The notes below the pieces were generated by a model, which saw only the letters and a list, made by a program, of their open reading frames with translations, searched no databases and was not told the origin of the DNA. A program made the position numbers and the translations under genes. Of a stretch of DNA of 64,000 nt, positions 39,694 to 41,373 are shown in pieces. The stretch lies in assembly GCF_006345805.1 (NCBI RefSeq), contig NC_043010.1, positions 24,924,001 through 24,988,000 on the forward strand, read 5' to 3'. Each line of letters starts with the position of its first letter. The stretch's first letter is position 1. The DNA is from Octopus sinensis. Taxonomy: Eukaryota.

Positions 39694-41373
39694 TTAGTGA
39701 GACTCAATAGAGTCGATTCCCTTTATTTTATTGTGGGCGGTCCCACACTGTCTCAGCCAATTCCCTAAACTTGCGTTAAAAAACGAATTTCTAAAAGAGT
39801 AAAAAAAATTCTACCTTAGTAGAGGGGATCTAAAATTAACAGCAAGGCGGGCGCTTCTTCGATGGGCAGAAGAAGCAAAATGTCAAATCCGGGTTTAAAT
39901 TTATTTTATTTTCAGTTCCTATCGAGGCACGGCCCCCAAACCTTGCCACCTCCTCAAAAACAAAATAAAATAAAAGTTTTGAGGGGCATCCTGCACACCA
40001 ACCTCTCGGTCCTCGAAAAAAAAAAGAAAAAAAATTTTGAGGACTTCATCGAGGGGGTTTTATGTGCAGGATGCGATAGGAACTCTCAGGGTCAAATTCA
40101 GTATATGAGCCATTGGAATTACCTGCAGTGTAAATGGCTCTATACAACTGCAGGGAACGTTGATAACGGCCCAACGTGGTTGGGCAACACGCTCTTAACC
40201 CACAAGCCACCATCTTATACGGCTCCTGGCAACCGTGTGTTTCATACCTTATAGTTTAAGGATTTGGACTTCGCGGCATTTTCCAAGAGTACGTGGAAGA
40301 AAATCAAGAGTACAAGAGTAAGGAATCAAGCCCTGCAGACCGTAAGCCAACATCCTTCATAGCCAACCGAAATCCGCACACTAAGCCAAGTACCCTGCAA
40401 CAGTCCGCGAAGGGCTCAATACTGACGGTTTACCCGTCAGTTGATTGGCTCCCGAAGTGAGGCCAAAAGTGAGTCCACTCATGCAATAAATTTTGTGAGC
40501 CACAACAATCTGGCGTCAGGAGACAGCAATCGAGAGCCACCCAGGGACAGCAGCCTTCACGAGGCGCTAACTTGTGGGCGAGATAAGAGGCAGGATGGAA
40601 GCACCCCATCCCCACCTCGCCCTGTCAGCAGCCCAAACCGGACAGCGAACCCAGCCGTTCTGACCTTAACCGTCCGTGGGCGCCACCCCGTAAAATTCTA
40701 TATAGAAATGGGGGGCCTTCACACAACACCGAAGCCAGGTAGTGGCCGATCCGGATGAGCAGGAGGCCGACAAGCGCAGCCACGACCAACCAACAGGGTA
40801 TCATCCCACTCTGTAAACGAAAATCTTCCACACTGCTTGGTCCCCACCAAATAATTGGAACCGCTATGGGGAAAAGACACATTTAGTTTGTCCGCGGACG
40901 GGTTGGCGCCCGCAAAAGCCAATAATGGCTTGCGTCCCCCCCCCCCCCGCAGACGTAAGCTCTTAAACCACGACAAGGTAGTGTCCCCGTGGGTGAAGCC
41001 TGGCAGTGCATCCATCTCCCGGGTGAAACCCGGCAGATCATAACATACCAGACAAACTTGATGGTGCATCCACCCTCTCGCCTCGCTGCCAATGTTCCAA
41101 TCGGACACCGCAGGTGTGTATCCCCCTATACACCAACCACACCGGTGTTCCTATAGGACACCGCAGGTGCCCCCAACCGACTGAACCTTTCTGCCCCCAA
41201 CGAAACTCGGTGGGGTGGGGACAAATCGTATCAAATCGGCTATTCAATAAAGTTCACCCCAAGTGGATGAGCAGTAGGAACAACCACCCATGGCAAGGTT
41301 CGTGGGTCATAACCATCAAGCCCCACTTAAGAGAACCTTTCTGCCCCCAACGAAACTCGGCCCCACTTAAGAG
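39694..41373 (-). mobile_element. Putative non-autonomous R2-dependent element (SIDE-like), non-coding
   Basis: Has a 5' HDV-like fold homologous to the R2 5' end and a 3' motif matching the R2 3' terminus at 30 of 36 positions. It has 28S-derived flanks and no recognisable ORF. Confidence 0.7.
40873..41373 (-). ncRNA. HDV-like self-cleaving ribozyme (predicted)
   Basis: P1 CUCUUAA/UUAAGAG, P2 GGGACAC/GUGUCUU, P3 ACC/GGU, L3 UUGUCGU, P4 UCUGCGG/CCGCGGA and J4/2 CUAA occur in the correct nested double-pseudoknot order. Confidence 0.65.

What the first reader, a model, noticed from the sequence alone, without database searches (positions are those of the whole stretch)
39713..39748. 3'-terminal motif shared between the spacer element and R2
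The element reads GTGTGGGACCGCCCACAATAAAATAAAGGGAATCGA and R2 (43,477-43,511, minus) reads GTGTGGGACCACCCACAGTAAACAACAGGGAA-CGA, which is 30 of 36 identical. Both keep a GUGGG/CCCAC hairpin, an A-rich linker and GGGAA. Both then have a small terminal hairpin of different sequence (GACUC/GAGUC versus UUGCGGA/UCUGCAA) 19-25 nt before GG and 28S-type sequence. Neither has a poly(A) tail. Because the rest of the two 3' regions looks unrelated, this comparison pinpoints the likely minimal R2 protein recognition signal.
Basis: partly seen in the sequence, partly recalled or inferred. Interest (0 to 1): 0.72.

Follow-up and report, generated by a model that had tools for sequence, protein, structure and literature searches.

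The report
R2 retrotransposon 3' protein-binding RNA module
A 36-base motif shared by an R2 retrotransposon and a non-coding insert in the ribosomal DNA spacer is real, and it matches the RNA "handle" that R2 proteins of birds and turtles are known to grip when they start copying; so this is a new example of a known device, now also seen on what looks like an R2 hitch-hiker element.

Summary
The motif occurs exactly twice in the 64 kb window, at 39713-39748 and 43477-43511 on the minus strand. The two copies are 30/36 identical, or 33/43 when extended (E 2e-4; 0 of 500 shuffles reach the score).

Both copies lie at the far 3' end of an insert next to 28S-type sequence. Each folds as a 6-bp hairpin, a 17-18 nt A-rich linker holding GGGAA, a second hairpin of unrelated sequence, and a 7-9 nt tail.

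This layout and spacing match the published pseudoknot-hinge-stem-loop module of vertebrate A-clade R2 3'UTRs (Gf-68 RNA). In that module the hinge motif GGAAAAG is read base-specifically by the protein. The window's R2 protein is A-clade-like, with three N-terminal zinc fingers and best structure hits to turtle and finch R2.

The spacer insert (39692-41365) has no R2 coding remnant. It matches R2 only at R2's 5' junction and 3' module, in the same order, like a SIDE-type non-autonomous derivative.

It is probably the recognition signal, but the working unit is likely the whole ~60-nt module, and the principle is already known. There was no covariation test and no binding test. The pseudoknot can form only 2 bp here.

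The parts
43477..43511 (-). R2 copy of the shared motif. Hairpin 1 is UGUGGG (43510-43505), loop ACCA (43504-43501), CCCACA (43500-43495). Then an A-rich linker, then GGGAA (43484-43480).
43450..43476 (-). R2 hairpin 2 and tail. UUGCGGA (43476-43470), loop UUAAUU, UCUGCAA (43463-43457), tail GAACCGG (43456-43450). The 28S sequence TAGCCAAATGCC follows at 43449.
39713..39748 (-). Spacer copy of the shared motif. Hairpin 1 is UGUGGG (39747-39742), loop ACCG (39741-39738), CCCACA (39737-39732). Then an A-rich linker, then GGGAA (39721-39717).
39692..39714 (-). Spacer hairpin 2 and tail. GACUC (39714-39710), loop UAUU, GAGUC (39705-39701), tail UCACUAAGG (39700-39692).
   Evidence: The tail has a weak, ambiguous resemblance to the 28S sequence upstream of the R2 site (p 0.03-0.08).
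43450..47997 (-). R2 element, about 4.55 kb, A-clade-like. The ORF is broken into three frames (47278-45875, 45815-44475, 44439-44179). The 3'UTR is about 729 nt. The 5' junction is 28S ...GACTCTCTT|GTCGCGG.
39692..41365 (-). Spacer insert X, 1674 nt. No R2 coding remnant and unique in the window. Its 5' boundary is exactly the R2 site of a 28S-derived fragment, and it ends with the R2-type 3' module.
40952..40982 (-). Segment inside X that resembles the R2 5' junction. X reads ACTACCTT|GTCGTGGTTTAAGAGCTTACGTC; R2 reads ACTCTCTT|GTCGCGGCAAGAGAGCTTACATC. This suggests an R2-like sub-element 40974->39692 (about 1.28 kb).
   Evidence: score 15 versus 9.4 +/- 1.15; 0 of 500 shuffles
41366..41406 (-). 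28S-derived fragment in the spacer, 38/41 identical to 28S -41..-1. It ends CTCTTAAG at the R2 insertion site and keeps the upstream motif that R2 proteins read.
   Evidence: the upstream motif (RUM) is described
39627..39691 (-). 28S-like 3' flank of X (TGAACGGATC ... GAGATTCCCACTGTCCCTATCTACTGTCTAGC). The first ~35 nt downstream of the R2 site are missing.
   Evidence: (family D7)
41412..41494 (-). A second 28S-derived fragment in the spacer (28S +33..+118). It is a paralogue of the 3' flank of X.

Best explanation
The shared block is the 5' stem, A-rich linker and GGAA hinge of the 3'-terminal RNA module of an A-clade R2 retrotransposon. The complete module is about 60 nt: hairpin 1, a 17-18 nt linker containing GGGAA, hairpin 2, then a short single-stranded tail that runs into 28S sequence.

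Inferred by analogy with the solved finch and turtle complexes: the R2 protein grips this module and places the RNA tail on the nicked 28S bottom strand, so that reverse transcription starts there.

The spacer insert is most likely a non-coding derivative or parasite of R2 (SIDE-like). It kept only what the R2 machinery needs in cis, which would explain why sequence conservation is confined to this block (and to about 25 nt at the 5' junction) while hairpin 2 is kept as structure only.

Shown: the two copies, their significance, their terminal position, the predicted two-hairpin fold, the match of layout and spacing to Gf-68, the A-clade nature of the protein, and the absence of coding remnants in the insert.

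Inferred: protein binding, the pseudoknot, and mobilisation of the insert by R2.
For: (1) Significance and uniqueness of the match.

(2) Same fold in both copies. A 6-bp hairpin with a 4-nt loop, a 17 or 18 nt linker, a 5 or 7 bp hairpin of unrelated sequence, and a 9 or 7 nt tail (z -2.6 and -2.9).

(3) Published Gf-68 RNA, folded. A 7-bp hairpin with a 5-nt loop, a 17-nt linker, a 10-bp hairpin and a 6-nt tail. GGAA lies 3 nt before hairpin 2 in Gf-68 and in R2, and 2 nt before it in the spacer copy.

(4) Published function. The terminal 65-68 nt are what is seen in cryo-EM and are sufficient for TPRT and insertion. The hinge motif GGAAAAG is read base-specifically (G-256, A-258). Pseudoknot mutations abolish insertion, and compensatory changes restore it.

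(5) The protein is A-clade-like. Best structure hits are PlaMe 9nl2 (2.9e-73) and TaGu 9nl3, ahead of Bombyx 8gh6. The three N-terminal zinc fingers align to TaGu residues 10-110, including ZnF3, which contacts the RNA pseudoknot in vertebrates. The Lys that reads A-258 is conserved (K191 of the 446-aa ORF, in APLKP).

(6) The insert matches R2 only at R2's two termini, in the same order. It has no protein remnant. It starts exactly at the R2 site of a 28S-derived fragment that keeps the upstream recognition motif.
Against: - Only two copies exist, and all six differences lie outside the stems, so there is no compensatory change for hairpin 1.
- The pseudoknot that is essential in finch RNA can form only 2 bp here (loop CC with GG).
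- In a longer R2 context (111 nt) the minimum-energy fold pairs the 5' strand of hairpin 1 with an upstream GC-rich stretch instead.
- The Arg that reads G-256 in vertebrate R2 is Glu in this frameshifted copy.
- The 3' flank of the insert is not the canonical TAGCC; about 35 nt of 28S are missing. So this copy's 3' junction is not a standard TPRT junction.
- The insert is single-copy in the window, and its 5' similarity covers only about 25 nt, not a whole ribozyme.
- No related motif was found in 8 other R2 3' junctions or in a metagenome scan.
Confidence: 0.62

Rival explanations
1. The spacer insert is the decayed remnant of an older or different R2 lineage, not a dedicated non-autonomous element. 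The motif is shared by descent because both lineages needed it while they were active. It has no present role in the spacer.
For: R2 lineages often coexist. This rDNA block is itself degenerate: the R2 ORF is frameshifted and the unit lacks 5.8S and most of 28S. The 28S flanks of the insert are diverged paralogues in the spacer.
Against: There are 1.2-1.6 kb upstream of the module with no trace of R2 protein coding (tblastn, best E 0.04-0.1). Under uniform neutral decay, a 77%-identical island next to unalignable sequence is not expected.
Confidence: 0.2
2. A short patch was copied between an R2 3' end and the spacer by gene conversion or recombination within the rDNA. The patch has no function as RNA.
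For: rDNA is prone to conversion. The spacer already holds several 28S-derived fragments next to the insert.
Against: A patch would not explain three things. There is a second hairpin of unrelated sequence at the same distance. There is a separate match to the R2 5' junction in the same order. The 5' boundary lies exactly at the R2 site.
Confidence: 0.08
3. The 3' end of the spacer block (GGGAATCGACTCTATTGAGTCTCACTAAGG) is a diverged copy of the 28S sequence just upstream of the R2 site (GGGAGTAACTATGACTCTCTTAAGG). On this reading 'GGGAA' and 'hairpin 2' in the spacer are accidental, and only the hairpin and linker are shared with R2.
For: Local alignment of this tail to the spacer's 28S-up fragment scores 9 (p 0.027), and to the true 28S scores 8 (p 0.077). 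The spacer is full of 28S-derived pieces.
Against: The p-values are marginal for a post-hoc comparison. The GGGAA-(N)-CGA identity with R2, and the matching distance from GGAA to hairpin 2, fit the R2 module better.
Confidence: 0.07
4. The similarity is due to chance.
For: None beyond the short length of the match.
Against: E 2e-4. 0 of 500 shuffles reach the score (22 versus 9.9 +/- 1.2). Shuffles gave 0 pattern hits. The two copies occupy equivalent terminal positions.
Confidence: 0.02

Closest known systems
Pseudoknot-hinge-stem-loop module of vertebrate A-clade R2 3'UTRs (Geospiza fortis Gf-68/Gf-98, R2Tg, R2Pm; PMC12180492, PMC12222951)
   Same: It lies at the extreme 3' end and is about 60-68 nt long. 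The 5' hairpin is G-rich and its loop begins AC. A 17-18 nt linker ends in GGAA 2-3 nt before a second hairpin. A short purine-rich tail runs into 28S. The partner protein has three N-terminal zinc fingers.
   Different: The loop is 4 nt (ACCA/ACCG) instead of ACGGG, so the pseudoknot can be only 2 bp instead of 4. The polarity is flipped, with C in the loop and G downstream. The linker is A-rich rather than U/A. The hinge is GGAACGA / GGAAUC instead of GGAAAAG. The Arg that reads the hinge G is Glu in this copy.
Bombyx mori R2 (D-clade) 3'UTR core P1-J1/2-P2 (PDB 8gh6; summarised in PMC12222951)
   Same: [quoted passage not shown] The core is bound by the RT -1 (NTE -1) domain.
   Different: In Bombyx the strands of P1 and P2 are separated by 81 and 98 nt, and no 3' homology is needed. 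Here the module is contiguous, as in A-clade elements. Rfam found no known RNA family other than rRNA in the 16-kb block holding both elements (E <= 1).
Drosophila R2 SIDEs (short internally deleted elements; Eickbush & Eickbush 2012, PMC3414825)
   Same: A non-coding element that keeps R2 5'-terminal and 3'-terminal sequence and sits at an R2-type target. It would depend on R2 protein supplied in trans.
   Different: SIDEs keep a whole 5' ribozyme and a long stretch of the R2 3'UTR, and they sit in 28S genes in several copies. Here only about 25 nt at the 5' end and about 43 nt at the 3' end are similar. The interior (about 1.2 kb) is unrelated to R2. The single copy lies in a 28S-derived fragment of the intergenic spacer and has a non-canonical 3' flank.
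Stringent-type LINE/SINE pairs that share a 3' tail (general knowledge, not tested here)
   Same: The parasite shares only the short 3' RNA element that the partner's reverse transcriptase recognises.
   Different: Those SINEs have pol III heads and are dispersed in the genome. No tRNA, 5S or 7SL head was detected here.

Membership tests
A-clade R2 retrotransposon (the autonomous element at 43450-47997) | Inserted at the canonical 28S site (CTCTTAAGG|TAGCC) | tested here: met
   5' junction GACTCTCTT|GTCGCGG; 3' junction GAACCGG|TAGCCAAATGCC
A-clade R2 retrotransposon (the autonomous element at 43450-47997) | Three N-terminal zinc fingers, then RT, then a C-terminal zinc knuckle and restriction-like endonuclease | tested here: met
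   Residues 30-132 align to the three-zinc-finger N-terminus (ZnF3-2-1) of TaGu, residues 10-110. RT, thumb and CCHC regions align to PlaMe and TaGu (2.9e-73 and 3.7e-62) better than to Bombyx (6.5e-49). The ORF is broken by two frameshifts.
A-clade R2 3' pseudoknot-hinge-stem-loop module | Contiguous module at the extreme 3' end (about 65-68 nt): 5' stem, linker, 3' stem-loop and a short tail into rRNA | tested here: met
   62 nt in R2 and 57 nt in the spacer copy. Predicted folds and spacing match Gf-68.
A-clade R2 3' pseudoknot-hinge-stem-loop module | Pseudoknot between the 5' hairpin loop and the strand just 5' of the hinge (4 bp in Gf) | tested here: inconclusive
   Only CC (loop) with GG can pair, which gives 2 bp. 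This was read from the sequences. No pseudoknot-aware prediction or probing was possible.
A-clade R2 3' pseudoknot-hinge-stem-loop module | Purine hinge with GGAA read base-specifically by the protein | tested here: inconclusive
   GGAA is present at the equivalent position in both copies. The Lys712 (Pm) equivalent is conserved, but the Arg911 (Pm) / Arg960 (Tg) equivalent is Glu.
A-clade R2 3' pseudoknot-hinge-stem-loop module | Binds R2 protein and is sufficient for TPRT | not testable with these tools
   Needs EMSA or TPRT assays.
A-clade R2 3' pseudoknot-hinge-stem-loop module | Helices supported by covariation across related elements | tested here: inconclusive
   Hairpin 2 is kept as structure with unrelated sequence (n = 2, plus Gf and Pm). 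Hairpin 1 never varies. No closer relatives were available.
R2 SIDE (non-autonomous internally deleted R2) | R2 3' end retained | tested here: met
   33/43 identity at the terminal module only
R2 SIDE (non-autonomous internally deleted R2) | R2 5' self-cleaving ribozyme retained | tested here: not met
   Only about 25 nt of the R2 5' end plus 8 nt of 28S are similar. Similarity stops after that, and no ribozyme family was hit.
R2 SIDE (non-autonomous internally deleted R2) | Inserted at the R2 site of 28S genes, in several copies with variable 5' junctions | tested here: inconclusive
   The 5' boundary is exactly at the R2 site, but of a 28S-derived spacer fragment. The 3' flank lacks about 35 nt. 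There is a single copy in the window.
R2 SIDE (non-autonomous internally deleted R2) | No coding capacity of its own | tested here: met
   tblastn with the R2 ORFs and 23 homologues found nothing better than E 0.04.

The most novel reading that the evidence does not exclude
The insert is a living, or recently living, R2 parasite in a mollusc-like host. It carries a stripped-down version of the A-clade module: a stem, a GGAA hinge and a stem, with at most a 2-bp pseudoknot. It can use 28S-derived pseudo-targets in the intergenic spacer. That would show that the core recognised by A-clade R2 proteins is older and simpler than the vertebrate pseudoknot, and that R2 machinery can colonise spacer copies of its target.
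Probability: 0.15. Interest if true: 0.6.

Novelty: new member of a known kind. Interest (0 to 1): 0.4.

Why it matters
A-clade R2 proteins are being developed for RNA-templated gene insertion. Their template requirement, a terminal 3' module, has so far been defined only in birds and a turtle. A distant A-clade element with the same layout but a different loop, linker and second hairpin works as a natural mutagenesis experiment. So does a natural 'deletion derivative' that kept only this block. Together they indicate which features are likely essential: the stem, the spacing, the GGAA hinge, the second stem and the short tail. The sequence of hairpin 2 and a long pseudoknot look dispensable. 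It would also extend SIDE-like R2 hitch-hikers beyond Drosophila. None of this overturns current understanding.

Tried and rejected
- Rfam, with gathering thresholds and with E <= 1, found only rRNA. No R2 3' element or HDV-like ribozyme family matched.
- The protein search for close R2 relatives gave at best 37% identity, so there were no same-genus copies to use for covariation.
- A metagenome scan for CCCAC..GGGAA..TAGCCAAATGCCTCGTC found nothing.
- The profile-based locus search returned 80 reverse-transcriptase-related loci. Together with the three loci fetched earlier, 8 loci show a 28S 3' junction. All 8 have a terminal hairpin and a purine-rich tail, but none has this motif.
- A home-made two-hairpin + GGAA descriptor was too loose. 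It gave 24 hits against 6-18 in shuffles. Only the two window copies and Gf-68 abut 28S-type sequence.
- The idea that the 140-bp spacer repeats derive from the 28S target region is not supported.
- The idea that sequence upstream of the internal 5'-like junction is 28S-derived is not supported.
- The idea that the spacer tail is a 28S-up copy gave marginal p-values, so it is kept as a minor rival.
- Taxon identification through R2 or a LINE RT fragment returned no named close hits, so 'cephalopod' remains unverified.
- I did not attempt a manual HDV-like ribozyme search of the R2 5' end.

Full report
LAYOUT OF THE LOCUS

The window holds a single GC-rich rDNA-like block (about 38-52 kb) between AT-rich, LINE-bearing DNA. 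The sense strand is minus.

Reading 5'->3' on that strand, the block contains:
- 18S (50718->48575);
- about 420 nt of ITS1-like sequence;
- then directly a ~150-nt 28S piece ending GACTCTCTT at 47998;
- an R2 element (47997->43450);
- the 28S 3' part (43449->41947);
- the intergenic spacer.

5.8S and the 5' two-thirds of 28S are absent. The R2 ORF is split into three frames.

THE OBSERVATION

The two 35/36-nt strings are as quoted. Both a degenerate sequence pattern and a structure-style pattern find only these two sites in the window, and none in shuffles. A sensitive blastn of the spacer against the whole R2 gives one significant hit, 33/43 identical, E 2e-4. In a targeted test, the last 70 nt of R2 score 22 against the spacer insert, where 500 dinucleotide shuffles give 9.9 +/- 1.2 with a maximum of 14. 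No interior 70-nt window of R2 exceeds 13.

STRUCTURE

The terminal 64 nt of R2 and the terminal 59 nt of the spacer insert fold into the same two-hairpin shape, better than shuffles (z -2.9 and -2.6). The shape is:
- hairpin 1, UGUGGG/CCCACA, with loop ACCA or ACCG;
- an 18 or 17 nt A-rich linker containing GGGAA;
- hairpin 2, UUGCGGA/UCUGCAA (7 bp) or GACUC/GAGUC (5 bp);
- a tail of 7 or 9 nt.

All six differences between the copies lie in the loop or the linker. Hairpin 1 is therefore supported by conservation only. Hairpin 2 is kept as structure with unrelated sequence. One caveat: in a 111-nt R2 context the minimum-energy fold uses the 5' strand of hairpin 1 in an alternative helix with an upstream GC-rich run.

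WHAT IT CORRESPONDS TO

Two cryo-EM studies of vertebrate A-clade R2 are relevant (PMC12222951; PMC12180492 and its preprint). They show that the protein binds the terminal 65-68 nt of the 3'UTR. That region consists of a 5' stem whose loop forms a pseudoknot, a 6-nt hinge, a 3' stem-loop and a short A-rich tail leading into the RT active site.

In those studies the motif GGAAAAG, at the end of the pseudoknot and in the hinge, is read base-specifically. G-256 is read by Arg960 (Tg) / Arg911 (Pm), and A-258 by Lys763 / Lys712. Pseudoknot mutations abolish insertion, and compensatory changes restore it. At least 4 nt of downstream rRNA are required.

Table S1 of the Science Advances paper gives the Gf-68 RNA. 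Folding it gives a 7-bp hairpin with a 5-nt loop, a 17-nt linker, a 10-bp hairpin and a 6-nt tail. GGAA sits 3 nt before hairpin 2. That is the same distance as in the window's R2, and the spacer copy has 2 nt.

Using the paper's numbering (G-235:C-254 and C-234:G-255 pair), the Gf loop CGGG pairs with CCCG. In the window the equivalent positions are loop CC and downstream GG, so only 2 bp can form, and the second pair is flipped in polarity. On this mapping GGGAA covers two pseudoknot G's, the hinge G (the G-256 equivalent) and AA (the A-257 and A-258 equivalents). That explains why exactly this pentamer is conserved between R2 and the spacer insert.

THE PROTEIN SIDE

The 446-aa ORF hits turtle and finch R2 structures (9nl2 at 2.9e-73, 9nl3 at 3.7e-62) better than Bombyx R2 (6.5e-49). 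The N-terminal ORF aligns its three zinc fingers to TaGu residues 10-110. The element is therefore A-clade-like and has a ZnF3, the finger that touches the RNA pseudoknot in vertebrates. The Lys that reads A-258 is conserved (K191, in APLKP). The Arg that reads G-256 aligns to Glu (in ISEEC), whereas most relatives have Arg at that position. This copy is a pseudogene, so the change may be decay or a real difference.

THE SPACER INSERT

The spacer contains three 28S-derived fragments:
- 41494-41412 corresponds to 28S +33..+118;
- 41406-41366 corresponds to 28S -41..-1, is 38/41 identical, and ends CTCTTAAG exactly at the R2 site;
- 39669-39627 corresponds to 28S +50..+92, with TGAACGGATC starting at 39691.

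Between the second and third fragments lie 1674 nt (41365->39692) that end with the R2-type module. This insert has no R2 protein remnant and no other copy in the window.

Besides the 3' module, the insert has one more match to R2. Positions 40982-40952 resemble the R2 5' junction: eight 28S-like bases followed by GTCG.GG....AGAGCTTAC.TC. The score is 15 versus 9.4 +/- 1.15, and 0 of 500 shuffles reach it. So only the two termini of R2 are represented, in the same order. That is the signature of a non-autonomous derivative such as the Drosophila SIDEs.

The insert nevertheless fails the SIDE definition on the ribozyme, because only about 25 nt at the 5' end are similar. Its 3' flank also lacks the first ~35 nt of 28S, so this copy's 3' junction is not a canonical TPRT junction. 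Two origins remain open. The insert may have entered a 28S gene and been moved into the spacer with a later deletion. Or it may have entered a spacer pseudo-target that still carries the upstream recognition motif. I cannot decide between these.

COMPARATIVE DATA

No close R2 relatives are in the searchable collections: the best protein identity is 37%, and a motif-plus-junction scan of metagenomes found nothing. Eight distant R2 3' junctions all show a terminal hairpin and a purine-rich tail, but not this motif. A loose descriptor gave no further credible modules. Covariation therefore could not be tested. The host taxon could not be verified.

VERDICT

The motif is real, non-random and terminal. 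Its best reading is that it is the stem, linker and hinge part of the A-clade R2 3' protein-binding module. The spacer insert is an R2-dependent or R2-derived non-coding element that kept that module.

The unit that matters is probably the whole ~60-nt module plus 3' homology. The principle was published in 2024-2025 for vertebrate R2. And nothing here tests binding.

I rate it a new member of a known kind and of moderate interest.

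Noticed in passing
window 47998-48575 (minus strand): The rDNA unit is rearranged. The 18S 3' end and about 420 nt of ITS1-like sequence run directly into a ~150-nt 28S piece just upstream of the R2 site. 5.8S and the 5' two-thirds of 28S are missing. The whole GC-rich block (about 38-52 kb) is a single unit flanked by AT-rich DNA, so it is probably an orphan or pseudogene rDNA copy.
   Followed up: partly
window 44439-44475 and 45815-45875: The R2 ORF changes frame twice (three ORFs of 467, 446 and 86 aa), so this R2 copy is not functional.
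   Followed up: partly
window 44736-44738 region (residue 360 of the 446-aa ORF): The residue that aligns with the Arg reading the hinge G in finch and turtle R2 is Glu here (ISEEC). Most relatives in the alignment have Arg.
   Followed up: partly
window 38441-39720: Eight tandem 140-bp spacer repeats, 98-100% identical. The last one abuts the 28S-like 3' flank of the insert.
   Followed up: partly
window 41183-41210 and 41333-41360; 41326-41338 and 41366-41378: The first ~390 nt of the insert contain a 28-nt exact direct repeat 150 nt apart, and a duplicated CTCTTAAGTGGGGC. This 5' part may be a separate piece, for example a tandem duplication or sequence added by a template jump, lying upstream of the R2-like 5' junction.
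   Followed up: no
window 40940-40952: A run of 13 G follows immediately after the R2 5'-like segment inside the insert. Similarity to R2 stops there.
   Followed up: no
window 36600-38200: A long GT-rich region with an 11-nt periodicity (dozens of degenerate copies), preceded by an (AT)n tract with long palindromes at 36510-36635.
   Followed up: no
window 20902-26351: Fragments of a LINE-type retrotransposon on the plus strand: RT, an APE-type endonuclease and a zf-RVT domain. It is unrelated to R2.
   Followed up: partly
L009 4721-4741: A distant R2 (28% protein identity) ends ...AUUAAAGGAAUCGAAUACUG|TAGCC. It shares AAAGGAAUCGA with the spacer copy (AAAGGGAAUCGA), but no second hairpin follows. 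This is possibly chance (roughly 1%).
   Followed up: no
window 48575-50718: The 18S match spans 2144 nt for an 1831-position model and scores only 719 bits. This suggests large expansion segments or decay.
   Followed up: no
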